IMG/VR virus record: IMGVR_UViG_3300026521_000471
Coordinates: 1 to 64,000 of that record
DNA length: 64,000 bases
Direction: 5' to 3' (one strand)
Below are positions 8,421-51,651 of the stretch, one piece after another. Positions within the stretch are counted from its first letter, which is position 1, and every line of letters begins with the position of its first letter. Below the pieces are notes generated by a model. It had not been told where the DNA came from. It ran no database searches and saw only the letters and a list, made by a program, of their open reading frames with translations. A program made the position numbers and the translations under genes.

Positions 8421-8678
8421 TTAAATAAAAAATTCGGGATATTTCTTTATCCCTGTATCTATCAAATATTTATCAGATTTTTTAATAAAATAAAACCCTT
8501 TTTTATAGCTCTTAGCAAGGTAACTATAAAATTCACTTTCTATATTAGTTTCAAATTCTTGAATATTATCAAAATTATGAGTAATATTGAAAACATTTAT
8601 ATATGGTTCTTTCTTATTATCAATATCTATACGTATTTCCATATCACTACCATACTTTAGTTTTATAAACCATTTCAT
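8421..8678 (-). CDS. small protein with PE-tail (YPEFFI)
   Basis: Terminal motif; coupled array. Confidence 0.7.
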   Translation of the reverse strand: MKWFIKLKYGSDMEIRIDIDNKKEPYINVFNITHNFDNIQEFETNIESEFYSYLAKSYKKGFYFIKKSDKYLIDTGIKKYPEFFI

Positions 8679-9037
8679 ATGAATAGCTCTGGAAATTTAT
8701 TAATTAGATAATATTTATTTTTATTTATGATTGAATATTTCCAATCCAAATAAATAGCTTCCATATAAATCAATGATAGAATATCATCTTCCCCTCGTTT
8801 TTTTAAAAGACCTGTTTCTAAGAATCTTTTTAGTCGAATTTGTTTTTCTAATGATGTAGTCTGTTCGATAATATTAAAGTGTTCATCGAGAGTAATAAGA
8901 GTTAGTTCATAGACACTTTTATCCATATCAAGTAATTCTTGCTTTATACTAGTATTTGATATATCTTGAATAAAAGCCTCTTTATCATCTTCCGTCATAG
9001 AATTATACAGTCGTCTAATACGTTTTAAAAGAATCAT
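8675..9037 (-). CDS. small protein with PE-tail (FPELFI)
   Basis: Terminal motif; coupled array. Confidence 0.7.
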   Translation of the reverse strand: MILLKRIRRLYNSMTEDDKEAFIQDISNTSIKQELLDMDKSVYELTLITLDEHFNIIEQTTSLEKQIRLKRFLETGLLKKRGEDDILSLIYMEAIYLDWKYSIINKNKYYLINKFPELFI

Positions 9038-9327
9038 ATAAAATCCTCAGGACACATATTTGCAGCAGTATTTATAAACGGTTTAAGAGTTCTAATAGCA
9101 TCTCTTGACATATTATTTTGTCGTTTATATAATGCTGCAATTATTTTATGAAATTCATTTTCTTCTTCAATTTTTAAAACTTGATATACTACTGTATCAA
9201 ATCCTCCACCAGGATTAAAATGATTTTCTTTTCTTTTATAATTTGTTTCGTATGGTATTTTTGTTATATAAAGATCTAAAATAAAATCAGATTTACCAAT
9301 AACTGCGATTTTCCATAATTTTTTCAT
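9034..9327 (-). CDS. small protein with PE-tail (CPEDFI)
   Basis: Terminal motif; coupled array. Confidence 0.7.
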   Translation of the reverse strand: MKKLWKIAVIGKSDFILDLYITKIPYETNYKRKENHFNPGGGFDTVVYQVLKIEEENEFHKIIAALYKRQNNMSRDAIRTLKPFINTAANMCPEDFI

Positions 9328-9626
9328 AAGTAATACTCCGGAAATTTATTTAGAGGATATGTTTTATCAAATTCATATTTTAGATTTTCAAGCGTATTGA
9401 CTAGCAAAGTATATTTTGTTGCTATTGAATTATTTAATGTTGGACAATCTAAAGACCCTTTAGCAATTTTTTGCTGAAACGTATATTCTTTAAGAAAACG
9501 ATTAGGTGACATAATTTGTAAGACATCACCCAAATCTTTTTTTTCATATAGAAAATATTTCATATCTATTAATTGTGCATACTTATCTAAAATTAAAAAT
9601 GGTAGATCTATTTTATTTTCTTTCAT
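9324..9626 (-). CDS. small protein with PE-tail (FPEYYL)
   Basis: Terminal motif; coupled array. Confidence 0.7.
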   Translation of the reverse strand: MKENKIDLPFLILDKYAQLIDMKYFLYEKKDLGDVLQIMSPNRFLKEYTFQQKIAKGSLDCPTLNNSIATKYTLLVNTLENLKYEFDKTYPLNKFPEYYL

Positions 9627-9641
9627 AATTCATTCCTATTT

Positions 9642-10022
9642 TTAAACATATAATTCTGGATACTTTTCAGAAAATATTTTATAATGTTTTGTGAAATTAG
9701 TTTGTTTATCAAAATCTTCTAATCGTTTTTTAAGTTCTATATATTTTTTACGTTGTAGTTTAGTAGCATAAGCTTGAGCTTTTTCAAATTCATCTTCAAA
9801 GAAAAAAAGACCAGCACTTGCATCACAACCAAAACCACCTTCAAAATCTAAGAATTTTTTCTTTTTTGTTTCACTAATTGCTATAGTAACAGATGATTTA
9901 TAAGGGAATTGATAATCATCAACATGATGACGATATTTAAGATCCTTTGGAACAATATAAAAAGTGTATGTGCCTAATTTGAGTTCTCTTTTGAGTCTAT
10001 ATTTAAATTCGTGAAAGTTCAT
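9642..10022 (-). CDS. small protein with PE-tail (YPELYV)
   Basis: Terminal motif. Confidence 0.7.
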   Translation of the reverse strand: MNFHEFKYRLKRELKLGTYTFYIVPKDLKYRHHVDDYQFPYKSSVTIAISETKKKKFLDFEGGFGCDASAGLFFFEDEFEKAQAYATKLQRKKYIELKKRLEDFDKQTNFTKHYKIFSEKYPELYV

Positions 10023-10237: not shown

Positions 10238-10996
10238 TTAAAAGATAAATAAATCTGTTACTATTTTTGGACGATATTTTTCATCATTTGTTTCTAAATA
10301 ATATTCACCTAGTAATATATGATTATCATTTAACGATTTAATTTCATCCAAAACCCATGTACGTTTTGAACTATTTGATGGGAGACTTTTATAAATTATC
10401 TCGAGCACTTCTAAATTTTTACTAAATTTCTTAATTAGGCTAATGATGATATTAGATTCATTTAAAGAAATTAATAATGGTATTATACTTTTAGAAATAT
10501 TTCCATTTTTAACAATAGTGCTTAAAATATATCCCTTATCATTAGAAAAGAATGCATCATCTATAGCTCTTTTTAAAAATATTTCCATTTTAGTTTCAGA
10601 TAATGAAGGGGCTATTTTTTGATAAAAATGTATAAGAAAATCAGATTTAGGATTTTGACTTGGATATGCTGAGTTATCATTTTCTATTTTAGATTTTCTT
10701 TCTTCGTCTGCTTTTGAAAATAAGTTATCTATAAATTTTTTAAATTCGTTATCATTTAATCTTTCTATAAAAGGAATTGCGTCATAATTGCTAATTAAAT
10801 CATAAGGGACTTCTTCTATAAACCAATCTTTTACTTTTTTAGAGAGTTCATTATTTTTTAGAATTTTTGAAAAACTATAAAAGTCATCAAATTCAATAGC
10901 CTTTTGTAAAAGTTGATTTTGTTCATCGTCTGAAATTTTACCAATATTGTCTAATTCATAAGAAAAATTCATATCATTTAGTTTGTCTATATTCAT
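10238..10996 (-). CDS. protein with second tail family (YLETNDEKYRPKIVTDLFIF)
   Basis: C-terminus aligns with 6918..7442; AATAAATA at 11018-11025. Confidence 0.7.
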   Translation of the reverse strand: MNIDKLNDMNFSYELDNIGKISDDEQNQLLQKAIEFDDFYSFSKILKNNELSKKVKDWFIEEVPYDLISNYDAIPFIERLNDNEFKKFIDNLFSKADEERKSKIENDNSAYPSQNPKSDFLIHFYQKIAPSLSETKMEIFLKRAIDDAFFSNDKGYILSTIVKNGNISKSIIPLLISLNESNIIISLIKKFSKNLEVLEIIYKSLPSNSSKRTWVLDEIKSLNDNHILLGEYYLETNDEKYRPKIVTDLFIF

Positions 10997-11081
10997 TTTT
11001 TAATCCATTTTTATTTTTATTTATTATTGTAAGAATTATAAAAAATGTAAAATAGAGAATATAACTAAAATAGGAGATTAT

Positions 11082-12120
11082 ATGACAAAAGAGGAATTAT
11101 TAAAAAGAAGAAAGGAAATTAAGTCCCAGATGTGGGATATTGAGAAAATATTAAAAGATAAGACATTCGTATCATCAGTTGACTTCGCTTCCATAAACTA
11201 ATGTGGCTTCTCTTGGTAACAAGGGAATGAAACAGAGTGTAAACTGCTGGAAACCCCTAAAGCTCGATTTCCTATTTTTAAAATAGGTGTGAGAACAGAA
11301 ACAATTATCGAGATGACTTAAAAGTGGAAACAGATTTGGGTTGGGTTAATTAAGTTTAACTAAAAATGGGCAATCAGCATCCAAGCTCTCTACCGGTTAG
11401 ATTAATACGTGAGTATTATTAAAGAGAGAAGGTTCAGAGACTATAATCACTCAGTCCTTAATTAAATTTGAAGGATTATTGTATAGTCCAGCGAAAAAAA
11501 TAATTACTAATTATTTCTGTGAAAGCAGATATTTTCGTAGGTACCCGAGCGTGATACGCCTCCTTAATGCCTCTATTGAAAATTTAGTTGGGTTTTTAGA
11601 TAATGACCCAATTGCATATAGAAAATTAGGGCTATCTAAAACTGTTAAGAAAGCAAAAGATATTTCAAAAGAACTAGTACGAACTGATTTACGGGAAAGT
11701 GATTATGTTAAATTTGTAGGTAAGAATGAAGATAAAATTTCATTACGTTTAGATTTATATAATGGAAAATATGCTGAGGCTGATATTACAGAAATTACAG
11801 AAACACCATTTGAACGATATTTTTTAGCAATATTATTTGGTGATGATGAGCAACTATTTAAGTTTCAAGATCAGACTTATACTGCTCAAGAATTTCAGGC
11901 TTTTCTTAAAGAGAATAATTTAAGTTTAAGTGGTAGTGGAGCAATCTATAAAGCCTATAAAATGGGTGATGATAAGAATAACCAAGGTATTATTCCTAGT
12001 TATTTAGAATACCTATTTTTGGAGCGAAAAAAAGTGAAGAAGGTGATGTTTACGCATTACCGACATAAAATTTTATTACAAAAATTTAAAAATGCTATGG
12101 AAGAAGATGGAAGATGGTAA
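11082..12120 (+). CDS. family B DNA polymerase middle fragment, two exons: join(11082..11194,11541..12120), 230 aa
   Basis: AGGAG RBS; splicing restores motif A FVSSVDFASMYPSVIRLLN; GIIPSYLEYLFLERKKVKK is the pre-motif-B fingers helix; no exonuclease, motif B or motif C in this ORF. Confidence 0.85.
11195..11540 (+). ncRNA. group I intron (346 nt, no ORF) in PolB motif A
   Basis: Exon-terminal U in P1 (CCAU/GUGG, U.G), terminal G, P3 GAGTG/CACTC, P4 TGCTG/CAGCA, GTTCAGAGACTA and ATAGTCC (P7); removal restores frame and motif. Confidence 0.92.
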
Positions 12121-12130
12121 GGGTTAAAAA

Positions 12131-12460
12131 TTGTTTCAAGAAGATGAAGAAGATTTATCTATATTAGAATTTTATAAACGTTTACCATATAATAAAATGA
12201 AAGAATGTGAAATTTTTATAACACCTGAGAAAATATATGGTATTCAATATGCTGATGATGCAGATACACGTATTTTGGCGGAATCATTAAATATTCTCAA
12301 AACATTAAAATCTAATGAGCTTAAAGACAAAATTGAACTCCATAGGACTGAGGGTGTATGGCGAGAGTTTTATACGTTCAAAAATGTAGTAAAAGCAATA
12401 AGAGAATATTTGCAGTTGCGACCAAATTTAATAGAAGAGTATCCAGAATGTATGATTTAA
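12131..12460 (+). CDS. small protein with PE-tail (YPECMI)
   Basis: Terminal motif. Confidence 0.7.
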   Translation: MFQEDEEDLSILEFYKRLPYNKMKECEIFITPEKIYGIQYADDADTRILAESLNILKTLKSNELKDKIELHRTEGVWREFYTFKNVVKAIREYLQLRPNLIEEYPECMI

Positions 12461-12690
12461 ACAATTTAAATAAAGGTGATATAATTGAATTTCAAATGTC
12501 CTTTGGAAAACTCCACGGTGTTATAGAAGTTAAAACAGAAGATTTAATACATGTTCGTAGTTTTTCTTTGGATAAAACTGCACATCGATGGTTTATGTTT
12601 TATCAAGAAACTTTTAAACATGTAAAAAATAATTATGGGGCTCAACTTGAAGACGACTTCATTACATCAAATCCTGAGAGGTTTATATGA
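12448..12690 (+). CDS. small protein with PE-tail (NPERFI); start moved from 12358 to ATG 12448
   Basis: GAAGAG upstream of 12448; avoids a long overlap. Confidence 0.65.
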   Translation: MYDLNNLNKGDIIEFQMSFGKLHGVIEVKTEDLIHVRSFSLDKTAHRWFMFYQETFKHVKNNYGAQLEDDFITSNPERFI

Positions 12691-12938
12691 AGAATATATA
12701 TGAAATAGCCAATGAATGTTATCCTATGTTATTAGTACACCCTGCAACAAACTGGGAACAGGAAATTCATAATTATAGAGCTCTAATTATCATAGAGATT
12801 TCAAAGCATTACCCTGATATTCTTGATAACTGTGAAGATTGCGTTAAAGTTATTCAAAATTCTGATGTACTAGAATATAAATTTAGTGATAAATTTATAA
12901 AACGGATTTTAGAAAAGTATCCTGAAGCATTAATATGA
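12687..12938 (+). CDS. small protein with PE-tail (YPEALI)
   Basis: Terminal motif; ATGA overlap. Confidence 0.7.
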   Translation: MKNIYEIANECYPMLLVHPATNWEQEIHNYRALIIIEISKHYPDILDNCEDCVKVIQNSDVLEYKFSDKFIKRILEKYPEALI

Positions 12939-13246
12939 AGTGTTCTGAAGAAGAAGCGATCGCTGTTAATTTTTTTAGAAAATTACCACCGGAAGTAAAG
13001 GTTGAAATTGATGAATATTTTTTACCTGAATTATCTGATGATACAAAAAATGCCCTTTTAAAAAATATTACTTTAATTGGTGAAGTTTTTAAAATGACAC
13101 CTAATTTAGCAGAATATTATACAAAATACGCTCAAGATTGTGATTACTTTCGATTGTTAGGATTTTGGGAAGAAATTAGTACTGTACTTGTAACTATATT
13201 TAATTCAACTGATTACTATGAAAGATACCCAGAATATTTGGTTTAA
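12935..13246 (+). CDS. small protein with PE-tail (YPEYLV)
   Basis: Terminal motif; ATGA overlap. Confidence 0.7.
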   Translation: MKCSEEEAIAVNFFRKLPPEVKVEIDEYFLPELSDDTKNALLKNITLIGEVFKMTPNLAEYYTKYAQDCDYFRLLGFWEEISTVLVTIFNSTDYYERYPEYLV

Positions 13247-15041: not shown

Positions 15042-16229
15042 TTATTTCTTTCTCAGTTTATTTTTTAATTCTTCTATTTGCTTAATTTTTTTCTCAGTAA
15101 TATCTTGTTTGATTGAAATATAACCAATCTTTACCCCATCTTTATCATAATATGGTGAAATCACATTATTTGACCAATAAGCACCACCATTTTTCTTTTT
15201 AGATTTAATTTCTCCTACCCAGTTTTTATCCGCTTCAATAGTTTCCCATAATTTCTTAAAAACATTTGCATTCATATCCGGATGTCTTATAATATTATGT
15301 GGTTCGCCTAATAATTCTGTTTTTGAATAGCCTGTTGTTTTACAAAAAGCTGATGATACATCTACAATTACTCCAAATAAATTCGTCTTGGTAAATATGA
15401 CATGTTTTTCAAAATCAGAATGCATACTAGTTAGTTGTGTATTAAGAATATCATTTTGTGTCATTAAGTCCGAAAAATCTTTGCTGTATTCATCGGCGAT
15501 TTTTTCATTTTCAAAATCAGCCCTTTCTTTTATTTTAATCATTGAATATATATAAATTATTCCAGAAATAAGCATGATCATAGAGACAATGAATAAAACA
15601 AATAACTGTAAATGTTTAATATTATCATTAATATCATTTATTGGTATCGTAGCTTCAGTAACCCCTCTAGCATCCCCTATTTTCCATTTAAAATCCCAAG
15701 TCTTTAACGGGTGGTGATTATGGCATTGGACACAAGATTTATTAGTCATATATTCGGTTTTCGCATACGTTAGATAATCTGTCCCGTCCTTTTCCGTTCT
15801 TAAAAATAGTTCCTTATGACCCTTTATATTTTTTAAGACCTTCAGCTGTAATTTTGTCAGAACTCTATCAGATTGATTTTTAAATGGAAAATTACTATAA
15901 ACAGATATACGTAAATTTGGATCGTCTATCATTGAAGCTACATCATGCATAAATGTTGCAGGATACGGTATTGTATTATTATCTTTATGTTCTGTACTAA
16001 ATTTTATACCATTAATATTATATATATCATCAACTACGTATTTGGCATAGTATTCTTTCGTTTTTAAAAGTAGATTTACTACTGATTTAGTTTTATCTTC
16101 TGCTAAATCAACTGCATATTCATGCATTTTATATGGAATAAAGACGTAAAGTGATATTAATGTAACAATATAAGATATAGTCACTCCAATTAAAAATTTA
16201 TTAGAAAACATTTGTAAAATATTTTTCAT
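15042..16229 (-). CDS. membrane sensor: periplasmic c-type heme domain (DUF3365/Tll0287-like) plus cytoplasmic PAS, no output domain
   Basis: TM helix, IPYPATF, YSNFPFKN, CVQCH (CxxCH), WKIGDARG, TM helix, PAS (HNIIRHPDM...LWETI...WVGEIKS); start at ATG 16229 after GAGGGA. Confidence 0.85.
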   Translation of the reverse strand: MKNILQMFSNKFLIGVTISYIVTLISLYVFIPYKMHEYAVDLAEDKTKSVVNLLLKTKEYYAKYVVDDIYNINGIKFSTEHKDNNTIPYPATFMHDVASMIDDPNLRISVYSNFPFKNQSDRVLTKLQLKVLKNIKGHKELFLRTEKDGTDYLTYAKTEYMTNKSCVQCHNHHPLKTWDFKWKIGDARGVTEATIPINDINDNIKHLQLFVLFIVSMIMLISGIIYIYSMIKIKERADFENEKIADEYSKDFSDLMTQNDILNTQLTSMHSDFEKHVIFTKTNLFGVIVDVSSAFCKTTGYSKTELLGEPHNIIRHPDMNANVFKKLWETIEADKNWVGEIKSKKKNGGAYWSNNVISPYYDKDGVKIGYISIKQDITEKKIKQIEELKNKLRKK

Positions 16230-16293
16230 AAGTCCCTCAGTTTGTTGATTTATCAACTTATTTATTTTCGGATTTACTTTCTTTAATTTATGA

Positions 16294-16315
16294 TTAAGGT
16301 CTAATATAATATAAT
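16294..16315 (+). promoter_or_regulatory. class I promoter TTAAG-N11-TATAAT
   Basis: Motif match upstream of 16338. Confidence 0.65.
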
Positions 16316-16337
16316 ATAAAAAATTAAAAAAGGATAT

Positions 16338-16736
16338 ATGATGCATATACGTAGTTTAGATTATTTTGATAAAGTGGGTCTGGTAACAAGCGGACTCTCT
16401 ATTTTTATTTCAAGTATTTTTTTACTTATGAGTTTTAGTTATTTAACAGAGAATTATTTAGTTATTTTAGGGTTGGTAAGTATTTCTTTAGTCCTAAATA
16501 ATTACTACCTTACCATAACTACACCAGAAATATTTAAAAAGATTAATGATGATCCCTGGAAATTTATTTTAGAACAAAGACCTATACTCGGACCTATTGC
16601 CGTTTTATTAAGTTTTTTATTAATAGGGACATTAATTAGTGGTAATCTTTTTGCATGGCAAATATATATTATATATTTTATTATGCTTATGCTTATGAAT
16701 CATACCTATTCAAAAAAATATAAACTTAGAGATTAG
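16338..16736 (+). CDS. membrane protein (about 4 TM)
   Basis: Hydrophobic segments. Confidence 0.7.
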   Translation: MMHIRSLDYFDKVGLVTSGLSIFISSIFLLMSFSYLTENYLVILGLVSISLVLNNYYLTITTPEIFKKINDDPWKFILEQRPILGPIAVLLSFLLIGTLISGNLFAWQIYIIYFIMLMLMNHTYSKKYKLRD

Positions 16737-17064: not shown

Positions 17065-17324
17065 ATTTAAAAAAGAGTGACATAGTCTTATTTAATTCTA
17101 ATATGTCTAATAATAAAATAGTTAAAACCACAGGTATTGTTATGGACAATGAAGATATTAATGGTATTATTAGTATTCAAGCTGTTGATGAAGTTGGAAG
17201 TATACGTTCTATTTTTGGAGCCTTTACATCGAATCCAACGGACATCCATAAGAGAAATATTATATCAGTCTTGGGTAATCTAAATGATTTAGTCATAGAA
17301 AAATTCCCTGAATATACAATTTGA
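17055..17324 (+). CDS. small protein with PE-tail (FPEYTI)
   Basis: Terminal motif. Confidence 0.7.
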   Translation: MEMNLKKSDIVLFNSNMSNNKIVKTTGIVMDNEDINGIISIQAVDEVGSIRSIFGAFTSNPTDIHKRNIISVLGNLNDLVIEKFPEYTI

Positions 17325-17337
17325 AAGGTAGGTACAA

Positions 17338-17721
17338 ATGGCACAACAAATAATTATGAGTGAAGATGGACAAGAAGATTTAAATAAAATAAGAGATGTT
17401 TATTTTGATTTAATGAATTATGGTATAATGCATGAAGATACAATTAATTCCATAGAAGAAGCATTCTTAACTTTGGTTACGAGAGATTTAGGAGCAGGTG
17501 GATTGACACTTGAAATGAACGAATCAGAGGATGAATATACTGATGCTTCAGAATTTCTTATAGATAACTACGGGTATTATGGTGTGTTTGAAGTTTTAAG
17601 TTTAGAAGATAATGAAACTCAACAAAAATATGCAAATTATCTTAGAGATATTTTTGCACTTGTTCTATATTCAGACAAATATTTGAATACAGAGGAAATT
17701 ATAGAAAAAATAGAGAGGTAG
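17338..17721 (+). CDS. hypothetical acidic protein
   Basis: ORF with RBS. Confidence 0.65.
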   Translation: MAQQIIMSEDGQEDLNKIRDVYFDLMNYGIMHEDTINSIEEAFLTLVTRDLGAGGLTLEMNESEDEYTDASEFLIDNYGYYGVFEVLSLEDNETQQKYANYLRDIFALVLYSDKYLNTEEIIEKIER

Positions 17722-17727
17722 AACGTT

Positions 17728-18390
17728 ATGAAAAAATATCCAAGAACATTTCATTTTCAGTTTTCTCCAGAAGTACATGATGATGATAAAGTTATATCTA
17801 TGAGATATCTTGGAAATTTTCTACAAGACGAAATAGTTATCCTAGAAAAATTAGATGGTGCTAATAGTTGTCTGAAAGGTCATCAAGGTGTATTTGGAAG
17901 AAGTCATACTTTACCAACTAAAGAACCTTGGTACGACCACCTAAAAGGTTTATACTATTCTAAATTGGATAACCTGAATCCGGACTATTGGTATTTTGGA
18001 GAAAATACCTATGCTATTCATAGCATTAAATATACTAATATGGATAGTTATTTTTATCTATTCGCTATCTATGATACAGTTAATAAAATATGGCTGTCTT
18101 GGGATGATTTAGTAGAAGAAGCAAAAAGAGTTGATATACCTACTGTACCTGTATTATTTAGAGGTACAGTTATCTCAATGGCTGAAGTAAATAAATGGAT
18201 GGATAAACACATTACCGATGAATCTCAATTAGGTGGTGAATTAGAAGGTTTTGTTATGAGAGTAACAAAAGCAATCCCAGGAGATAAATTCAATGAGTTT
18301 GTAGCAAAATACGTTAGAAAAGGTCATGTGCAGACTGATGACCATTGGACAAAAAATTGGAAACCTCAAACTTTAAAGGTAAATAAATGA
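17728..18390 (+). CDS. ATP-dependent RNA ligase family protein
   Basis: KYPRTFH, motif I EKLDGAN, FGEN, FYLFAI, motif IV EGFVMR, motif V AKYVR. Confidence 0.85.
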   Translation: MKKYPRTFHFQFSPEVHDDDKVISMRYLGNFLQDEIVILEKLDGANSCLKGHQGVFGRSHTLPTKEPWYDHLKGLYYSKLDNLNPDYWYFGENTYAIHSIKYTNMDSYFYLFAIYDTVNKIWLSWDDLVEEAKRVDIPTVPVLFRGTVISMAEVNKWMDKHITDESQLGGELEGFVMRVTKAIPGDKFNEFVAKYVRKGHVQTDDHWTKNWKPQTLKVNK

Positions 18391-18635
18391 GTGCATCGGA
18401 CTACTTAGATCCAGAAATTAAAGATTTTGTTAGAGGGTATTCTAGAATAAATGTTGAATTAAAAAGAATACCTCCTAAGCTTTTAAAAACTAAGTTGGTT
18501 TCTTCATATGAGTCTGTTTCTTCAGCATCATATTTAGGTGATATTGAAAAAAATAATATGTTATGGTGTATAACTCAAGCTATTGAGGAATTGCATAATG
18601 AGATTTCAGAAGTTTATCCAGAGATTTGTATATGA
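18387..18635 (+). CDS. small protein with PE-tail (YPEICI)
   Basis: Terminal motif. Confidence 0.7.
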   Translation: MSASDYLDPEIKDFVRGYSRINVELKRIPPKLLKTKLVSSYESVSSASYLGDIEKNNMLWCITQAIEELHNEISEVYPEICI

Positions 18636-18898
18636 ATAATTTATCAAAAATAAAAGAGAAAGTTGAAAATGAATTAGAGAAGGTATCTAGAGAGATCTTC
18701 GATATGAAGATAGTAAATGATATGACAATAAGATTCTTTCAGATGAATTATACTAAATGTGAAATTAAACCTGATTATATTAAATGTATGAAATGTCACA
18801 ATATGGAAGATCCTTTTAAATCAACCAATATAGAGATAATTCTTTCAGACGCTTTTATAAATGAGTTAAAAAAACATTACCCGGAAGATCTAATATGA
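18626..18898 (+). CDS. small protein with PE-tail (YPEDLI)
   Basis: Terminal motif; likely start ATG 18632. Confidence 0.7.
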   Translation: MYMNNLSKIKEKVENELEKVSREIFDMKIVNDMTIRFFQMNYTKCEIKPDYIKCMKCHNMEDPFKSTNIEIILSDAFINELKKHYPEDLI

Positions 18899-19161
18899 AC
18901 ACTTTAAAAGAATACGTGAATTATTGTGCACAACTTTTTAAAGCCTTTAGATTTAAAGAGACTGAAATTAGTACTATATTTTTATCAAAATTACAAAAGA
19001 AGTATCCATTAACTAAAAATCTATCAAAAGATGATTTTGAAATACATTTTGAATACTGTATTAGAGAATGGGATGACGTTAAAACTAGACATTGCTTTAT
19101 TGATATTAAACACTCTCTAGTAGATAAAATTTCTGAGGAGTACCCCGAATCATGCATATAA
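18895..19161 (+). CDS. small protein with PE-tail (YPESCI)
   Basis: Terminal motif. Confidence 0.7.
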   Translation: MNTLKEYVNYCAQLFKAFRFKETEISTIFLSKLQKKYPLTKNLSKDDFEIHFEYCIREWDDVKTRHCFIDIKHSLVDKISEEYPESCI

Positions 19162-19406
19162 AAGATTTTATAGATAGTATGGAACATGCACTACATCAAG
19201 ATAATATAATATCTAAGGAAGAAGTGGTTATAAAATACGTAGAAGCCGTATATCCAAAATTAAAAAATAAAATTCCTAAAAATGATATAATTATTACTGA
19301 AAATAAAATAACATTAAACTTTATCCCTCCAACAAAATATACTGTATCATTTAGAGAAAAGTTTTATGACGCATTTAAAATACATTATCCTGAATACATG
19401 ATTTAA
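19152..19406 (+). CDS. small protein with PE-tail (YPEYMI)
   Basis: Terminal motif. Confidence 0.7.
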   Translation: MHIKDFIDSMEHALHQDNIISKEEVVIKYVEAVYPKLKNKIPKNDIIITENKITLNFIPPTKYTVSFREKFYDAFKIHYPEYMI

Positions 19407-36813: not shown

Positions 36814-38268
36814 ATGAATGAAAATGATGTTAAAGAAGAAATTAAAGAAGCTTGGAAAGATTTAAAAAACGGTACAAAAGTTAAAGCTAAGCTTACTGAA
36901 AAAATGGATGAGAAGCTCGACGGTTTAGTAGCAGCAGCAAAAGCTGGAAATTGGAAAACTCAGCTGGAAGAAGCAATAGTACAGATGATTACTTATAATT
37001 ATTCAAGTAATGAAAGTTTAATGTGGTATGGACATTTAGTAACTCAATGTGAAATAAAAAGAGATTTAACTATGCCAAGTCCTGCTGGGGTAAGATTTAT
37101 GTTTAATAAATACGAGATGTTTATTAATCCTTTACTTTTTGGTTTATATTCAACCGATGAACAAATTGCTATATTGAAACATGAAATGTTACATATTATC
37201 AATTTGCACATTGTAAGACAAAAAGATAGAGACCATAAAAAATGGAATTATGGTACTGATTTATCTATCAACCAATTAATCCCAAACATTCCTGAAGATG
37301 GATTACAACCTGAAAAATTTGATTTTGCAAAAAACCTTAATGCAGAACAGTATTATGATATGATACCTACAAACTATGAGAGTGAAGAACCTCAAGAAGG
37401 TAATGAAGACGGTGAGGGTGGTGGAAGTTGTTCTGCACAAGGTTCCGGAGATGGAGAGCCACAAGATGGTGATGGTTCTGGAAACGGTGATGGTTCTGAT
37501 GTAATTGATGATGAGAAAAAACTTAAAGATCTAATCTCCCAAGCATTAAATGCAGCTCAAGAAGGAATGATTGGTGATCATGGTAAGTGGCAAAATTCTG
37601 AAGGTGATGAACAGGCCGCAAAAGAAATTACAAGACAGATGTGTGAAACAGCTACTAATAAATCCAGAGGTATGACACCAGGTGAAGTAGAAGGAGCAAT
37701 CCAATTACTTAAAATGCAGGAGCAAATTAACTGGAAGAAAGAGCTGAGAAGAATTGTTGGTAATAGAAAAGCATTTTCTAAACTTACAATTAAGAAAAAT
37801 GATAGAAGATTTCCAGGTCGTAAGGATTTAAGAGGTAAAACAAAAGATCATACAAAAGATATTGTAGTTATCTTAGATGTATCGGGTTCTATGAGTGATG
37901 AGGAAGTTCTCTATGGTTTAAATGAAATTAAGGCTATTGCAGAAAAAGCTAGAGCTGGGGTTACTATTATTCAAGTTGATACAGAGCCAAAAATTGTAGA
38001 AGATTTTGATCCAAAAGCAAAAACTTTTAATCGTAGAGGTTATGGTGGTACTTATATGACTCCTGGAATTGAAATGATTAAGGAACAGAAATTAAAATGT
38101 GACTGTATTTTGTGTATAACTGATGGTTACATTGAATCAACTTTTGATATTGATTTACCAAGAGTACCATTTATTTTCTTAGTTACACAAGATGCAGATA
38201 ATTTATCTATTGATGTAGGTTCATATCCGAGAATGAAAAAACATACATTGAAAATTGGTGATAAGTAG
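36814..38268 (+). CDS. DUF2201-type HExxH metallopeptidase plus VWA domain protein
   Basis: LKHEMLHI, WNYGTDLSIN, G/D-rich linker, MIDAS DVSGS, GYGGT, TDGY. Confidence 0.9.
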   Translation: MNENDVKEEIKEAWKDLKNGTKVKAKLTEKMDEKLDGLVAAAKAGNWKTQLEEAIVQMITYNYSSNESLMWYGHLVTQCEIKRDLTMPSPAGVRFMFNKYEMFINPLLFGLYSTDEQIAILKHEMLHIINLHIVRQKDRDHKKWNYGTDLSINQLIPNIPEDGLQPEKFDFAKNLNAEQYYDMIPTNYESEEPQEGNEDGEGGGSCSAQGSGDGEPQDGDGSGNGDGSDVIDDEKKLKDLISQALNAAQEGMIGDHGKWQNSEGDEQAAKEITRQMCETATNKSRGMTPGEVEGAIQLLKMQEQINWKKELRRIVGNRKAFSKLTIKKNDRRFPGRKDLRGKTKDHTKDIVVILDVSGSMSDEEVLYGLNEIKAIAEKARAGVTIIQVDTEPKIVEDFDPKAKTFNRRGYGGTYMTPGIEMIKEQKLKCDCILCITDGYIESTFDIDLPRVPFIFLVTQDADNLSIDVGSYPRMKKHTLKIGDK

Positions 38269-38524
38269 AGTTATTATGTGGGCTTATAAGTTTACAGATT
38301 CAAGAGGAAATGATTACTATGAGTTTCCTTTTGAAATATCTAGTTCAACATTTCTTAATTCAAATGAATATCAAATAGTAAATACTGAAAGAGAAGCTGT
38401 TAAAGAATTTAAAAAAGCAATTGATTTCAATATACCATATAAAGCTCATTATGAAGATATGCAAAAACTTAATAAAGAATTGGCTAAATTATATCTTAAA
38501 AAGTATCCGGAGATATTTATATAA
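38255..38524 (+). CDS. small protein with PE-tail (YPEIFI)
   Basis: Terminal motif. Confidence 0.7.
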   Translation: MVISRVIMWAYKFTDSRGNDYYEFPFEISSSTFLNSNEYQIVNTEREAVKEFKKAIDFNIPYKAHYEDMQKLNKELAKLYLKKYPEIFI

Positions 38525-38865
38525 TGTATCATTTTAAATTAAAACTTAGAGATATTCACAAAAATGCGTATAGATCATTTTTATTTCCAGAAAAAGCACC
38601 TAAAAATTCTACTAGTCATTGTGCGAAAATCAATTCGTTATATACAGAAGGTTGGTTTGCTGATAAATCATTGATAGAATCTGAAATCCACTTTATTAAA
38701 TCTGTTAAATTTTTTTTAAATGGTGCAATTAAAGATTTAAAGAAAAATAACACTTATACAGGGTGGGATGAATCATATCTTAAAGATGATGTTGCATTTT
38801 TAGAAAATGTATGGAAATTAACAATTCAAAAATATGCGGATAAATATCCGGAGCTAGTATTATGA
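38524..38865 (+). CDS. small protein with PE-tail (YPELVL)
   Basis: Terminal motif; TAATG overlap. Confidence 0.7.
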   Translation: MYHFKLKLRDIHKNAYRSFLFPEKAPKNSTSHCAKINSLYTEGWFADKSLIESEIHFIKSVKFFLNGAIKDLKKNNTYTGWDESYLKDDVAFLENVWKLTIQKYADKYPELVL

Positions 38866-39101
38866 GTTTTATCAAATTCACATTTAAAAATAACAGCTAT
38901 GCTATAGGACGTTTATTTTCAAAGATTGGAAAAGATAACTGGGCAAATATTGAAATAGTTAAGCCGTATAATGGTAGAAATGAGACTTTAAAAAAATATT
39001 ATACTAAGGGTAGAACATTTCAAGCTGATACATCTAGTACTTCAGATTATGTTAAAACTGCATTTATAGATCCAAAGTCTCACCCAGAATATTTTATTTA
39101 A
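38862..39101 (+). CDS. small protein with PE-tail (HPEYFI)
   Basis: Terminal motif; ATGA overlap. Confidence 0.7.
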   Translation: MSFIKFTFKNNSYAIGRLFSKIGKDNWANIEIVKPYNGRNETLKKYYTKGRTFQADTSSTSDYVKTAFIDPKSHPEYFI

Positions 39102-39106
39102 AAAGG

Positions 39107-39469
39107 TTGTTGATGTATTTCTCATATCAAGCACATACTTTAGATGGAAAATCTCTTAAAATTTATTTACCATTACCAACTAAAAAATCACAATATGAAG
39201 ATAGACTGAAATTTTATAAACAAATAGATGATAGAAAATTATATGTCGTGAAAGATACTAAAGATATTATTAGAGAATGTCATATACATAATACTTTAAA
39301 AGAATCAATAAATTATATAAGAAAAGATCTAATATATTCGATTGAATGGATAAGTGATGATAAAAATGCACCTCCTGGTAATCCTGATGTTTATGTGGCT
39401 AAATGTAGAGATGCTTTAACTGAATTAGAAAATAAATATATCAATAAATTCCCGGAGATATTCTTATGA
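39107..39469 (+). CDS. small protein with PE-tail (FPEIFL)
   Basis: Terminal motif. Confidence 0.7.
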   Translation: MLMYFSYQAHTLDGKSLKIYLPLPTKKSQYEDRLKFYKQIDDRKLYVVKDTKDIIRECHIHNTLKESINYIRKDLIYSIEWISDDKNAPPGNPDVYVAKCRDALTELENKYINKFPEIFL

Positions 39470-42109: not shown

Positions 42110-43682
42110 ATGGCAAAAGAGAAATTTGTTAGGGGTGAAAAACCTCATGTTAATGTGGGAACAGTAGGGCATAGACTATGTGCCATCTCTTGGTAACAAG
42201 GGATTAAAAAGAGTTTAAATTGTCTGGAAACCCCTAAAGCTTCTTTTACTAAAACAGAGCCAGAAATGGCATATGGTATAGTTAATGAAAATTAGAAAGA
42301 AAAAAGAAGATGGAATATGTGGAAACGCTAAGTTCTTTATAATGGGCAATCAGCAGCCAAGTTACCTAACTCAAATATATTGAGATTTCTATGTGAATAG
42401 AATTTAAGGTAGAAGGTTCAGAGACTGTAATAACTCAGTCCGTTAATCTTAATTGAATTTCGGATTATGGTACAGTCCAGACTACAACAACTTTACTTAG
42501 TTAGTTGGCTTATGAAAGTAAGTGTAGTAATTGGTAGATCATGGCAAGACTACTTTAACTGCAGCAATTACAGCAGTAATGGCAGTTAAAAACGGTGCAG
42601 CATTTATGGATTACGATCAAATCGATAATGCACCAGAAGAAAGAGAAAGAGGTATCACTATTGCTACTTCTCATGTTGAATATGAAACTGATAAAAGACA
42701 TTATGCTCATGTTGATTGTCCAGGTCACGCAGATTATGTTAAAAATATGATTACTGGTGCTGCACAAATGGATGGTGCTATTCTTGTTATTGCTGCTACT
42801 GATGGACCTATGGCTCAAACGAGAGAACATATCCTTCTTTCAAAACAAGTTGGTGTACCAGCAATTGTTGTTTTTATGAACAAAGAGGACCAACTTGATG
42901 ATGAAGATAAAGATGAAATGGCTGAACTTGTAGAAATGGAGATTAGAGAACTTCTTGACCAATACGGTTTTGATGGTGATAACACTCCTGTTATTCTTGG
43001 TAGTGCATTTCAAGCTCTTGAAGAAGCAAAAACCGGTACTTTAGGTGAGTGGTCAGAAAAGATTGTACAACTTATGGATTCAGTAGATGAGTGGATTCCA
43101 GAACCAGTTAGAGATACTGATAAGGATTTCTTAATGCCTATTGAAGATGTATTCTCAATTGCAGGTAGAGGTACAGTTGTTACTGGTAAAATTGAGAGAG
43201 GTACAATCAAACTTGGTGAAACAGTAGAAATTGTAGGTATTAAAGACACTCAAACATCAACTGTTACAGGAATTGAGATGTTCCGTAAAGAGATGGAAGA
43301 AGGTTTAGCTGGGGATAATGCAGGTATTCTTCTAAGAGGAATTTCAAAAGATGATGTTGAAAGAGGTCAAGTTCTTTGTAAACCTGGTTCAATAACACCA
43401 CATACAAAGTTCAAAGCGGAAGTTTATGTTCTAAGTAAAGATGAGGGTGGTCGTCATACTCCATTCTTTAATAATTATAGACCTCAGTTCTATTTCTATA
43501 CATCTGATATTACTGGTGCAATTACACTAGAAGAAGGTGTTGAAATGGCTATGCCTGGTGATAATGTGACTATTACGGTAGAACTTATTGCTCCAATGGC
43601 TATCGAAAAAGGAACAACTTTTGCTATTAGAGAAGGTGGTAGAACTGTCGGCTCTGGTATGATTGGAGAAATTATCGAGTAA
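42110..43682 (+). CDS. tuf: elongation factor Tu, two exons: join(42110..42172,42534..43682), 403 aa
   Basis: Exon 1 [21 protein letters not shown] plus exon 2 VDHGKTT; [30 protein letters not shown]. Confidence 0.97.
42173..42533 (+). ncRNA. group I intron (361 nt, no ORF) in the tuf P-loop
   Basis: P1 GGCAU/GUGCC with U.G at the splice site; P10 CUAU/GUAG; GGGCAATCAGCAGCCAAG; GTTCAGAGACTG and ACAGTCC (P7); terminal G; removal restores GHVDHGKT. Confidence 0.95.
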
Positions 43683-50428: not shown

Positions 50429-50713
50429 ATGAATACTAGTAGAGAAAGTTTTCAATTAGATTTAGAACGTACTACATCAACAGAATTAGAAGAAGTCGTA
50501 ATATGTTCAAAATGTAATGGTTATGGTTCTTCACAATTAAAAGGTGATTTTATTGTTTACGGGAATGATACAGATCTTAAACAAAATAATATTTGTTCAT
50601 CTTGCAATGGTACTGGAAAATTAATCAAACAAACCGTAGTATCATTTGTATCATTTGACCCAAATTTAGCAATAAAAACACATATCGTTTCAAATCCAGA
50701 AAATTTTATTTAA
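50429..50713 (+). CDS. DnaJ-type CxxCxGxG zinc-finger protein with PE-tail (NPENFI)
   Basis: CSKCNGYG, CSSCNGTG. Confidence 0.75.
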   Translation: MNTSRESFQLDLERTTSTELEEVVICSKCNGYGSSQLKGDFIVYGNDTDLKQNNICSSCNGTGKLIKQTVVSFVSFDPNLAIKTHIVSNPENFI

Positions 50714-50757
50714 TTTTAAAGTATAACATAGTATAATTAAAGAAAATAGGATTATGC

Positions 50758-51024
50758 ATGTTTATCAAAATGGAATTTGAAGATGATTATTATTTGATCG
50801 TGCCACCAGACTCAATAAATAATAATTTTTTAATTAAAGTAATATCTGAAAAAGATAAAATTGATTTTCCACATCTACATAATCATATTTATAATAATAA
50901 AATTAAGGCTGAAATTGAATGTCTTAAATTGGAAATAATGCGTACTAATAACGAAGAAACTAAATCTAGATTTAGAGAAATGTTATCTGTCTATACAAAA
51001 TTATATCCTGAATATATTATATAA
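50758..51024 (+). CDS. small protein with PE-tail (YPEYII)
   Basis: Terminal motif. Confidence 0.7.
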   Translation: MFIKMEFEDDYYLIVPPDSINNNFLIKVISEKDKIDFPHLHNHIYNNKIKAEIECLKLEIMRTNNEETKSRFREMLSVYTKLYPEYII

Positions 51025-51035
51025 GAAGGTGATTT

Positions 51036-51410
51036 ATGAAACGAACATTAACAAGTACATTTGATAATATGGTTGCATTGATTAAAAGAAAAGAACCTCA
51101 TATCGATGCCATTAAAAAAGCAGAAGAAGAATTCAAGAATCAAAATATCAAATTAAAATACTATGTTACTACAATAGGTATGCCAAAATTATCAGATATA
51201 GCAGAAGGTACATTAGTCAAAACACCTGCTAAGTATTTTGATAATTTGATACAAGCAAAATTATTTCAAGATAAAATAATTTTAGATGAAAGTAAGAAAA
51301 ATATTGATGAGCGACATATTTGGTTTGATAGTATTACAAATGATGAACTAAATTTTGTCAAAAATGAATTTAATAATCTAATAAAGAATTATCCAGAATA
51401 TGCAATTTAA
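51036..51410 (+). CDS. small protein with PE-tail (YPEYAI)
   Basis: Terminal motif. Confidence 0.7.
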   Translation: MKRTLTSTFDNMVALIKRKEPHIDAIKKAEEEFKNQNIKLKYYVTTIGMPKLSDIAEGTLVKTPAKYFDNLIQAKLFQDKIILDESKKNIDERHIWFDSITNDELNFVKNEFNNLIKNYPEYAI

Positions 51411-51651
51411 TAATATAGAAATAGGTTCTATAATTATTACAAAGTATGGTGCATTTAAAGTATTTGCTTCCCCAAGTATGAAACAAATCAATGGAAATAA
51501 TATATTATCCATACCATCAATAAACTTATTACATAAGGCATCAAAACCATTTGATATTGGTATTAAATATATACCTATTAGTCATATAATAGAGAAATTT
51601 AATATCTCTATCAATGAATTTATAAAAGAATACCCGGAGAAAATTATATGA
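51400..51651 (+). CDS. small protein with PE-tail (YPEKII)
   Basis: Terminal motif. Confidence 0.7.
   Translation: MQFNNIEIGSIIITKYGAFKVFASPSMKQINGNNILSIPSINLLHKASKPFDIGIKYIPISHIIEKFNISINEFIKEYPEKII

What the first reader, a model, noticed from the sequence alone, without database searches (positions are those of the whole stretch)
11082..12120. Group I intron hides the catalytic motif A of a PolB gene
Seen: ORF 11479 looks like an orphan, but joining 11194 to 11541 creates ATG and the motif SVDFASMYPS, putting the catalytic Asp in exon 1. Unspliced exon 1 stops two codons into the intron (TAA 11199-11201). Automated annotation would miss both the intron and the polymerase.
Basis: seen in the sequence. 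Interest (0 to 1): 0.7.

Follow-up and report, generated by a model that had tools for sequence, protein, structure and literature searches.

The report
Self-splicing intron in phage polymerase piece
A 346-base self-splicing (group I) intron really does interrupt the catalytic motif of a small DNA-polymerase gene in an uncultured giant phage from hydrothermal vents; the intron is of an ordinary kind, but the gene encodes only a 230-residue piece of a polymerase whose other catalytic motifs lie in a second gene 53 kb away.

Summary
Bases 11195-11540 are a group I intron. Rfam scores it 37.9 bits (below the cut-off of 50), but the same-site intron in a relative scores 65.6. It has a U·G pair at the 5' splice site, a terminal G, and 36 of 88 pairs with compensatory changes.

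A near-identical phage (99.8-99.97% in the flanks) lacks exactly these 346 bases. It encodes a 230-aa protein identical to the predicted spliced product. That product passes Pfam DNA_pol_B (27.1 bits, cut-off 23), whereas the unspliced ORF hits nothing in Pfam. Homologous introns sit at the same codon in at least six diverged relatives. A sister intron (79% identical) splits the phage's own EF-Tu gene at 42173-42533.

The gene is not a whole PolB. It belongs to a conserved stand-alone family of about 230 aa (68 relatives) covering T4 gp43 residues ~394-500, with an invariant motif A Asp and invariant finger Arg/Lys. Motifs B and C lie in a separate 283-aa palm-plus-fingers protein (genome 64573-65424), which lacks the motif A Asp. 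No exonuclease or thumb domain was found.

The intron is a new member of a known kind. A polymerase assembled in trans is plausible but unproven.

The parts
11043..11053 (+). AAATGTAAAAT, a possible promoter element (extended -10 type) 29 nt before the start codon. This is a weak lead only.
   Evidence: Four copies on the + strand of the window against 0.81 expected. The generic sigma-70 scan was no better than shuffles.
11072..11076 (+). Shine-Dalgarno AGGAG, 5 nt before ATG 11082.
   Evidence: Read directly from the sequence.
11082..11194 (+). Exon 1: 37 codons plus 2 bases (MTKEELL...FVSSVDFAS + AT). It carries the motif A Asp (D34).
   Evidence: It aligns with the N-termini of uninterrupted homologues. 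D34 is invariant in 47 homologues.
11191..11206 (+). P1: exon CCAU (11191-11194) pairs with the intron guide GUGG (11203-11206). U11194·G11203 is the wobble pair at the 5' splice site.
   Evidence: The U·G pair is kept in all 5 aligned introns. The tuf intron has compensating GGCAU/GUGCC.
11195..11540 (+). Group I intron, 346 nt, with no ORF of 40 aa or more inside and terminal G at 11540. Helices: P2 11208-11227 (GUAA loop); P3 11235-11239/11448-11452; P4 11245-11250/11374-11379; P5 11254-11256/11368-11370 with extension 11263-11343; P6/P6a 11381-11432; P7 11439-11445/11482-11488; P8 11453-11477; P9 11499-11512; P9.1 11514-11531 (GAAA loop).
   Evidence: Rfam hit. Absent from the intron-less allele. 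Consensus fold with 36 of 88 compensated pairs. Helix coordinates; P3 and P7 covariation.
11541..12120 (+). Exon 2: G + 192 codons + TAA (MYPSVIRLLNAS...EEDGRW). It holds the rest of motif A, an insertion of about 110 aa, and finger helix N (ERKKVKK).
   Evidence: PHROG DNA-polymerase hits for exon 2 alone.
11479..11540 (+). Spurious 5' extension of the 'orphan' ORF (TTG start). It is intron P7-P9 sequence read in frame (MYSPAKK...).
   Evidence: The same artefactual MYSPA... N-terminus appears in database proteins P0020 and P0036 from intron-bearing relatives.
42110..42172 (+). Exon 1 of the phage EF-Tu gene ([21 protein letters not shown]).
42173..42533 (+). Sister group I intron, 361 nt and 79% identical to the polymerase intron. 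It splits the P-loop GH|VDHGKT of EF-Tu.
   Evidence: Rfam 27.1 bits. End-to-end alignment with coinciding splice sites. nhmmer finds only these two copies in the genome. An RNA-library contig starts at 42173.
42534..43682 (+). Exon 2 of the phage EF-Tu gene.
   Evidence: Pfam GTP_EFTU, D2 and D3, E 8e-56.

Best explanation
Bases 11195-11540 are an ORF-less, self-splicing group I intron. It sits between the second and third base of the Met codon in motif A (D-F-A-S-M-Y-P-S) of a small phage gene.

Splicing mechanism: the guide sequence GUGG pairs with exon CCAU, giving a U·G pair at the splice site. Guanosine-initiated splicing then joins 11194 to 11541 and restores a 230-codon frame.

The product is a stand-alone protein conserved in a clade of AT-rich giant phages from hydrothermal-vent and related samples. 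It corresponds to the first palm strand (motif A, catalytic Asp, steric-gate Tyr) and the first finger helix (dNTP-binding Arg/Lys) of T4/RB69-type family B DNA polymerases, with an inserted domain of about 110 residues.

Shown here: the intron, its exact borders, its presence/absence polymorphism, and the PolB identity of the product.

Inferred: (i) the intron splices in vivo. (ii) The 230-aa protein works as a subunit that supplies the motif A carboxylate to a polymerase whose motifs B and C lie in the separately encoded 283-aa palm-and-fingers protein (genome 64573-65424). PhiKZ and some T4-like phages build PolB from two polypeptides in this way. (iii) The intron moves between phage genomes at the DNA level, by recombination or a trans-acting nuclease, and reached the EF-Tu gene (or came from it) by an ectopic event that only needed the shared CAU|GUA context.
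For: INTRON
- Rfam RF00028 gives a full-length match of 37.9 bits, E 9.8e-8.
- The orthologous intron at the same site in L013 scores 65.6 bits, above the cut-off.
- The consensus fold of 5 introns has 88 pairs, 36 with both-sided changes. P1 U·G is invariant.
- P3, P7 and P1 show compensatory changes between copies.

BORDERS
- A DNA contig in run X4 skips exactly 346 nt, with no ambiguity in the joint.
- ENA contig L008 has the same gene order, is 99.8-99.97% identical, and lacks exactly these bases.
- Its product P0019 equals the predicted spliced protein.

SPREAD
- Homologous introns sit at the same codon in L009-L012, L013/14, L015, L016 and L017.

MOBILITY SIGNATURE
- Three of the five substitutions in 6.6 kb lie within 90 nt of the insertion site.

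RNA
- A metatranscriptome holds perfect-match contigs for intron interiors only. One starts at the first base of the EF-Tu intron, and the flanks have zero depth.

PROTEIN
- Pfam DNA_pol_B 27.1 bits, above the cut-off of 23.
- phrog_262 DNA polymerase, down to E 1.6e-17 for homologues.
- The family profile hits T4 gp43 400-438 and 460-500.
- D34, S37, Y39, R200, K201 and K204 are invariant in 47 sequences.

PARTNER
- Only one ORF in the genome has motifs B and C.
- Its model is confident (pLDDT 89.6), and the best fold matches are the palm and fingers of PolB enzymes.
- No acidic residue is conserved at the motif A Asp position.
- Both genes co-occur in a 306-kb relative and on a 52.5-kb contig.

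PRECEDENTS
- PhiKZ DNAP-N carries the motif A Asp and DNAP-C the motif C Asp, in a stable 1:1 complex (PMC13648687).
- gp43A and gp43B of Aeromonas phage 25 co-purify and are active (PMC2988022).
Against: - The window's intron is below Rfam's gathering score, so the default scan misses it.
- No RNA read across the spliced junction was available. Because intron-less DNA exists, a junction read alone would not prove splicing.
- The two PolB-derived proteins overlap in fold rather than being clean halves. Both contain a finger helix N, and the 283-aa model has its own motif-A-like strand and Tyr.
- No exonuclease, N-terminal or thumb domain of PolB was found in the 224-kb contig, which is 85% complete.
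Confidence: 0.85

Rival explanations
1. The 230-aa protein is not a catalytic subunit. It would be a conserved relic or accessory or regulatory protein derived from a T4-like polymerase. The 283-aa protein would work alone or with other partners, or also be non-catalytic. The intron is still real in this case.
For: - The 283-aa model is a self-contained palm and fingers with its own motif-A-like strand, Tyr and finger helix.
- hhalign shows that the two proteins duplicate helix N.
- The 230-aa model alone has no PDB fold match, and its motif A strand is disordered.
Against: - The catalytic Asp, the steric-gate Tyr and the triphosphate-binding Arg/Lys are invariant across 47 sequences at 37-73% identity. 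That is hard to explain for a non-catalytic relic.
- The genome has exactly one canonical motif A and one motif B/C set, on different genes.
- The 283-aa family has no conserved carboxylate at the motif A position.
- Split active sites are documented in PhiKZ.
Confidence: 0.3
2. The intron in this genome is a decayed, non-splicing insertion, so the gene is a pseudogene in this phage.
For: - The Rfam score is below the cut-off.
- There is no direct RNA junction evidence.
Against: - All core helices are intact and carry compensatory changes.
- The guide sequence matches its own exon, and the EF-Tu copy has a differently matched guide.
- The exons encode a protein identical to that of the intron-less allele.
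- Intron-bearing alleles persist in relatives whose proteins are 54-75% identical to this one, with intact exons.
- A sister copy sits in EF-Tu with the P-loop split exactly.
- Intron RNA is present in a metatranscriptome.
Confidence: 0.05
3. The 346-nt difference between alleles is an assembly artefact or a deletion unrelated to RNA splicing.
For: The evidence comes from metagenome contigs of low depth, about 6x.
Against: - The intron-less form was assembled independently in two data sets, Logan run X4 and ENA ERZ27262685.
- The gap borders coincide to the base with the P1 U·G and the terminal G of a covariation-supported ribozyme.
- About 47 homologues have the uninterrupted motif.
Confidence: 0.02

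Closest known systems
Group I introns in phage DNA polymerase genes (Bacillus phages SPO1 and Bastille with I-HmuI and I-BasI; Bacillus phage G)
   Same: A self-splicing group I intron placed in a highly conserved, functionally critical stretch of a phage replicative polymerase gene. It is polymorphic among related phages (PMC2988022; PMC7824862).
   Different: - From my own knowledge, the SPO1 and Bastille introns lie in family A polymerase genes. They encode nicking HNH endonucleases (the I-BasI paper title says as much).
- This intron has no ORF.
- It lies in a family B fragment gene, exactly inside motif A.
Phage T4 td / nrdB / nrdD introns
   Same: Small phage group I introns in nucleotide-metabolism genes. 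The nrdB intron is a non-mobile example (abstract of PMC1865063). Presence or absence varies among close relatives.
   Different: - Different host genes.
- From the Rfam alignment and the consensus fold, this intron shows no helices between P7 and P3' or P8. The subgroup was not determined.
- Two paralogous copies sit in one genome, one of them in EF-Tu.
PhiKZ split family B DNA polymerase (DNAP-N gp82 plus DNAP-C gp50)
   Same: The motif A Asp is on one polypeptide and the motif C Asp on another. They are encoded by distant genes in a giant phage. There is an insertion right after motif A (PMC13648687).
   Different: - PhiKZ DNAP-N (638 aa) also carries the N-terminal and exonuclease domains, and DNAP-C (731 aa) has a thumb.
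- Here the motif A protein has only 33 residues before the Asp.
- The core protein is 283 aa without a thumb, and both carry a finger helix N.
- Association is not shown here.
gp43A/gp43B of T4-related Aeromonas phages 25 and 44RR
   Same: A T4-type PolB in two cistrons that co-purify and are active (PMC2988022). The PHROG family of about 500-aa polymerase proteins (phrog_2062) ends where this 230-aa protein ends, at profile 494-498 of 502.
   Different: - Those halves are adjacent genes that together cover the whole enzyme.
- Here the pieces are 53 kb apart, much smaller, and of different apparent ancestry. One is T4-like by sequence; the other is closer to archaeal and eukaryotic PolB.

Membership tests
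Group I intron (Rfam RF00028) | P1 helix with a U·G wobble pair at the 5' splice site, formed by an internal guide sequence | tested here: met
   CCAU(11191-94)/GUGG(11203-06). The U·G pair is present in all 5 aligned introns. The guide co-varies with the exon in the EF-Tu copy.
Group I intron (Rfam RF00028) | Terminal guanosine (omega G) at the 3' splice site | tested here: met
   G at 11540. The intron-less allele fixes the border. All relatives end in G before GUAYCC.
Group I intron (Rfam RF00028) | Conserved catalytic core P3-P4-P6-P7-P8, including the P3/P7 pseudoknot | tested here: met
   Full-length alignment to the model, positions 1-253. Covariation in P2, P3, P5 extension, P6, P7, P8 and P9.
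Group I intron (Rfam RF00028) | Score at or above the curated gathering threshold (50 bits) | tested here: not met
   37.9 bits for the window copy and 27.1 for the EF-Tu copy. The homologous same-site intron in L013 reaches 65.6 bits. The long P5 and P6 extensions cost score.
Group I intron (Rfam RF00028) | Guanosine-dependent self-splicing | not testable with these tools
   Indirect evidence only: intron-interior RNA contigs with zero-depth flanks in one metatranscriptome, one beginning at the first intron base. No RNA run covering the exons was listed.
Mobile (homing-endonuclease-encoding) group I intron | An endonuclease ORF inside the intron | tested here: not met
   No ORF of 40 aa or more lies inside 11195-11540 on the intron strand. 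The only listed ORF that begins there, at 11479, reads on into exon 2 and is an artefact. The intron is 346 nt. An HNH-like ORF exists elsewhere (36814-38268), but no link to it was shown.
Family B DNA polymerase (Pfam PF00136) | Motif A, DxxS(L/M)YPS, with the catalytic Asp | tested here: met
   DFASMYPS is formed only after splicing. Pfam 27.1 bits, above the cut-off of 23, aligned at 28-59. D34, S37 and Y39 are invariant.
Family B DNA polymerase (Pfam PF00136) | Motif B (KxxxNSxYG) and motif C (YxDTDS) in the same protein | tested here: not met
   Both are absent from the 230-aa product. They occur only in the separate 283-aa ORF at genome 64573-65424.
Family B DNA polymerase (Pfam PF00136) | N-terminal and 3'-5' exonuclease domain (PF03104) and a thumb | tested here: not met
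   No PF03104 match in the genome at E up to 10. Searches with phrog_262, phrog_2062 and phrog_2927 found nothing beyond the 230-aa gene. A separate DEDDh exonuclease ORF exists at 190979-191743.
Split PolB holoenzyme (PhiKZ DNAP-N+C type) | The two polypeptides form a stable complex with a shared active site | tested here: inconclusive
   The motif A Asp and the motif C Asps are on different proteins, which co-occur in relatives. The structure-prediction test returned 'no answer'.

The most novel reading that the evidence does not exclude
This phage clade may replicate with a minimal, modular family B polymerase. Its active site would be assembled in trans from three parts: a 230-aa subunit giving the motif A Asp, Tyr and finger Arg/Lys; a 283-aa thumb-less palm-and-fingers core giving motifs B and C but lacking the motif A carboxylate; and proofreading from a separate DnaQ-type exonuclease. 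Splicing of the intron would gate the supply of the catalytic Asp subunit. The core's conserved C-terminal ...FPEYxI peptide, shared with about 37 small phage proteins, would be a docking motif for a common hub such as a clamp-like factor.
Probability: 0.25. Interest if true: 0.75.

Novelty: new member of a known kind. Interest (0 to 1): 0.5.

Why it matters
Practical point: the default Rfam scan and ordinary gene callers both miss this intron, so the phage's only canonical polymerase motif A goes unannotated. The same mis-call (exon 2 alone, with an intron-derived MYSPA... start) is already present in public protein sets for several relatives.

Biological points:
- The pair of near-isogenic intron-plus and intron-minus genomes, with substitutions clustered at the site, is a clean natural example of recent movement of an ORF-less intron.
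- The sister copy inside a phage EF-Tu gene shows spread to an unrelated site that shares only CAU|GUA.

The gene itself points to a family B polymerase broken into unusually small, separately encoded pieces. If confirmed, this would extend the recently solved PhiKZ two-subunit polymerase to a more extreme architecture.

Tried and rejected
- Default Rfam scan of the whole window at gathering thresholds: nothing. The intron shows up only with E-value thresholds on a short stretch.
- tblastn of both PolB pieces against 50,697 GenBank phage records: no match.
- Pattern-based search of IMG/VR with the single exon-2 protein: nothing. The family alignment found one 306-kb relative. The 283-aa family alignment found none by pattern, although a direct search of that relative did find it.
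- Foldseek of the 230-aa model against the PDB: no meaningful match, best E 0.29. The isolated model is only moderately confident, and its motif A strand is disordered.
- Complex prediction of the 283-aa core with the 230-aa protein: verdict 'no answer', score 0.00, controls not run. This is not evidence either way.
- Search for the rest of a PolB in the genome: PF03104, phrog_262, phrog_2062 and phrog_2927 found nothing more. Motif regular expressions in six frames found only the 283-aa ORF.
- Among ORFs of 250 aa or more, no family A or C polymerase appeared in the listed Pfam families. Those lists were truncated at 25 of 33-38 families.
- The Pfam alignment suggested 'DTLSNYG' (residues 29-35 of the 283-aa protein) as its motif A. 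I rejected this because it is not conserved in the family.
- RNA evidence for the junction: no RNA run holding exon 2 was listed. The one metatranscriptome holds intron interiors only.
- Sigma-70 promoter and terminator scan around the gene: no better than shuffles.
- I first placed the EF-Tu intron start at 42175, from the nhmmer envelope. Re-reading the sequence puts it at 42173.
- One Pfam call failed on a mis-set frame and was repeated.

Full report
CONTEXT

The window is the first 64 kb of a 224,467-bp IMG/VR viral contig (27.9% G+C, CheckV completeness 85%). Its best DNA holders are hydrothermal-vent and epibiont metagenomes. The contig carries rIIA/rIIB, topoisomerase II, a DnaB-like helicase, an SSB, sigma factors and the RNR small subunit. 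It also carries GroEL, DnaJ, an aspartyl-tRNA-synthetase-like gene, EF-Tu, Pnkp/Hen1, Thg1 and TnpB. This is a giant phage with many translation and RNA-repair genes.

THE OBSERVATION

- ATG at 11082, behind AGGAG at 11072-11076.
- Exon 1 reads ...FVSSVDFAS and, if unspliced, stops at TAA 11199-11201.
- ORF 11479-12120 is an apparent orphan with a TTG start.
- Joining 11194 to 11541 makes AT|G and a 230-codon frame with SVDFASMYPS.

IS IT A GROUP I INTRON?

The default Rfam scan of the window finds nothing. With E-value thresholds on 1.5 kb, RF00028 matches 11185-11510 over the whole model: 37.9 bits, E 9.8e-8, against a cut-off of 50.

The anatomy is canonical.
- P1 pairs exon CCAU with the guide GUGG, putting U11194·G11203 at the splice site.
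- P2 has a GUAA loop.
- P3, P4, P5 (with a long extension), P6/P6a, P7, P8, P9 and P9.1 (GAAA loop) are all present.
- The last base, 11540, is G.
- There is no ORF inside.

A second copy, 79% identical, lies at 42173-42533 in the phage's EF-Tu gene. There the junction is fixed independently by the universal P-loop sequence GH|VDHGKT. In the end-to-end alignment both splice sites of the two introns coincide. These are the only two copies in the genome.

COMPARATIVE PROOF OF THE BORDERS

A 1,123-nt DNA contig in run X4 lies on 10900-11194 and continues at 11541. It skips exactly 346 nt with no ambiguity in the joint.

An ENA contig (L008, 7.9 kb) has the same gene order. It is 99.97% identical upstream and 99.83% downstream, and it lacks exactly these bases. 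Its 230-aa product, P0019, is identical to my spliced translation.

Three of the five substitutions in 6.6 kb lie within 90 nt of the site: 11186, 11613 and 11631. All must be synonymous, because the proteins are identical. This is the pattern expected from co-conversion during DNA-level gain or loss of an intron.

THE INTRON IN RELATIVES

Of 68 homologous protein clusters, about 47 are full length with an uninterrupted motif A. Several are N-terminally cut at motif A. Their contigs show homologous introns at the same codon:
- L009/L010/L011 (P0020, 75% identical protein)
- L012 (P0036)
- L013/L014 (P0044)
- L015, L016 and L017, where the contig starts inside the intron.

All have ...UCCAU|A... 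at the 5' side and G|GUAYCC at the 3' side. The L013 intron, which lacks the long P6a arm, scores 65.6 bits, above Rfam's cut-off.

A five-sequence alignment gives a consensus fold of 88 pairs, 36 with both-sided compensatory changes. Read directly:
- P3 is GAGUG/CACUC, GAGCG/CGCUC and GAGUU/AACUC in three copies.
- P7 is GACUAUA/UAUAGUC against GACUGUA/UACAGUC.
- The guide sequence follows its own exon: CCAU/GUGG against GGCAU/GUGCC.

RNA

No RNA run holding exon 2 was listed. One metatranscriptome (X8) holds perfect-match contigs for intron interiors only.
- 11240-11382, depth 16.
- 42173-42389, depth 44, beginning at the first base of the EF-Tu intron, with zero depth on the phage-specific flanks.

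This fits a stable excised intron RNA and argues against DNA carry-over. It is not a splice-junction read.

THE GENE PRODUCT

The exon-2 ORF alone has no Pfam hit and only PHROG DNA-polymerase hits (phrog_262, E 1.4e-6, profile 408-488 of 856).

The spliced protein (P0019) passes Pfam DNA_pol_B at 27.1 bits against a cut-off of 23, aligned over motif A. Homologues reach E 1.6e-17 against phrog_262.

A family profile hits T4 gp43 at 400-438 (motif A) and 460-500 (first finger helix). About 110 extra residues lie between the two stretches.

In 47 sequences at 37-73% identity to the window protein, the following are invariant:
- D34, S37 and Y39 (motif A Asp, Ser and steric-gate Tyr)
- R200, K201 and K204 (finger helix).

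In every relative examined it is a stand-alone gene of about 230 codons with a divergently transcribed neighbour upstream.

WHERE IS THE REST OF THE POLYMERASE?

Only one other PolB match exists in the genome: a 283-aa ORF at 64573-65424, just outside the window. Six-frame motif scans find motifs B (KLYLNMVYG) and C (YIDTDE) only there. They find no uninterrupted canonical motif A anywhere.

The 283-aa family (10 sequences) keeps K138, N142, Y145, G146, D192 and D194 invariant. It has no conserved acidic residue where the motif A Asp should be. A Tyr (Y90) and a nearly invariant D/E82 lie nearby. Its AlphaFold model is confident (pLDDT 89.6), and its best PDB matches are the palm and fingers of Pol alpha and archaeal PolB. 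There is no thumb.

No exonuclease or N-terminal domain of PolB was detected. A separate DEDDh exonuclease is encoded at 190979-191743. No other replicative polymerase family appeared among the large ORFs, although those lists were truncated.

Both PolB-derived genes co-occur in a 306-kb relative, 22 kb apart. By matching contig length, they also co-occur on a 52.5-kb contig.

HOW IT LIKELY WORKS

The intron is transcribed with the gene and removes itself. Only then is the Met codon of motif A rebuilt and a protein with the catalytic Asp made.

I infer that this protein is one subunit of a polymerase built from separately encoded pieces, for three reasons.
- Its catalytic residues are under strict conservation.
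- The genome's single set of motifs B and C sits on a protein that lacks the motif A carboxylate.
- Split family B polymerases with motif A and motif C on different chains are established. PhiKZ DNAP-N D562 and DNAP-C D426 form a stable 1:1 complex (PMC13648687). Aeromonas phage 25 gp43A/B is another case (PMC2988022).

Against a simple 'two halves' picture, both proteins contain a finger helix N (hhalign), and the 283-aa model has its own motif-A-like strand. The complex prediction gave no answer. The architecture therefore remains open.

MOBILITY

With no endonuclease ORF, spread between phages is probably by recombination in co-infection or by a trans-acting nuclease. The clustered substitutions support a DNA-level event.

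The two insertion sites share only CAU|GUA, and each copy's guide sequence matches its own exon. This is what an ectopic move (for example reverse splicing, or illegitimate homing followed by adaptation) would leave. It is inference only.

COMPARISON AND NOVELTY

Group I introns in essential phage genes, including DNA polymerase genes, are well known. This one is a new member of that kind. Three things are notable about it.
- It cuts motif A itself.
- It is missed by default tools.
- It has a paralogue in a phage EF-Tu gene.

The more unusual feature is the host gene: a conserved 230-aa PolB fragment family, paired with a thumb-less 283-aa core.

Noticed in passing
window 42110-43682: The phage encodes its own EF-Tu. 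The gene is split by a 361-nt group I intron (42173-42533) exactly inside the P-loop (GH|VDHGKT). This intron is 79% identical to the polymerase intron. An RNA-library contig (0 mismatches, depth 44) starts at the first intron base.
   Followed up: partly
Genome 64573-65424 (just beyond the window; L002:1417-2268): A 283-aa thumb-less PolB palm-and-fingers protein with motifs B and C but no conserved motif A Asp. Its model is confident, and PolB enzymes are the top fold matches.
   Followed up: yes
Window clusters 8421-9642 (-), 12131-13246 (+), 17324-19406 (+), 38524-39469 (+), 50713-51651 (+), and elsewhere in the genome: 38 ORFs of 50 aa or more end exactly in [Y/F]-P-E-x-x-[I/L/V]-stop. 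Most are 80-140 aa. They include the 283-aa PolB core (...FPEYRI), where the motif is conserved across its family. The Pro and Glu codons vary synonymously, so the motif is at the protein level. It may be a shared C-terminal docking peptide; its function is unknown.
   Followed up: partly
window 11186, 11613, 11631 compared with L008: The intron-less and intron-bearing genomes differ by 5 substitutions and one 2-nt indel in 6.6 kb. Three of the substitutions lie within 90 nt of the insertion site, which looks like a co-conversion tract.
   Followed up: yes
window 11240-11382: Metatranscriptome run X8 holds a 167-nt perfect-match contig from the intron interior (depth 16) but nothing from the exons. 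The contig folds back on itself at 11359-11382.
   Followed up: no
window 36814-38268: A 484-aa ORF matches the PHROG 'HNH endonuclease' family phrog_1314 (E 2.4e-65). It could be a free-standing nuclease. No link to the ORF-less introns was shown.
   Followed up: no
window 15042-16346 (-): A 434-aa membrane protein with a CxxCH haem-binding motif and PAS domains. A PAS protein sits at a similar place in the related contig L004.
   Followed up: no
window 4992, 11043, 29221, 30875: AAATGTAAAAT occurs four times on the + strand (0.81 expected). In at least two cases (4992, 29221) it directly follows the stop codon of the preceding ORF, and at 11043 it lies 29 nt before the ATG at 11082. It is a possible phage promoter element.
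   Followed up: no
Whole genome (G000): The contig encodes GroEL, DnaJ, a class II aaRS with a GAD domain, Pnkp/Hen1, Thg1, a TROVE (Ro-like) protein, Sir2, NAD synthase, two Rep3-type initiators, TnpB transposases, rIIA/rIIB and a DEDDh exonuclease at 190979-191743.
   Followed up: partly
Protein P0008 (3093 aa, another metagenome); L005:2955-7107: A 3,093-aa protein shares a short stretch (E 2.4e-5) with residues 101-150 of the exon-2 protein, which lie in the inserted domain of the 230-aa protein. In one relative a 3,008-aa ORF lies 2 kb downstream of the polymerase-piece gene.
   Followed up: no
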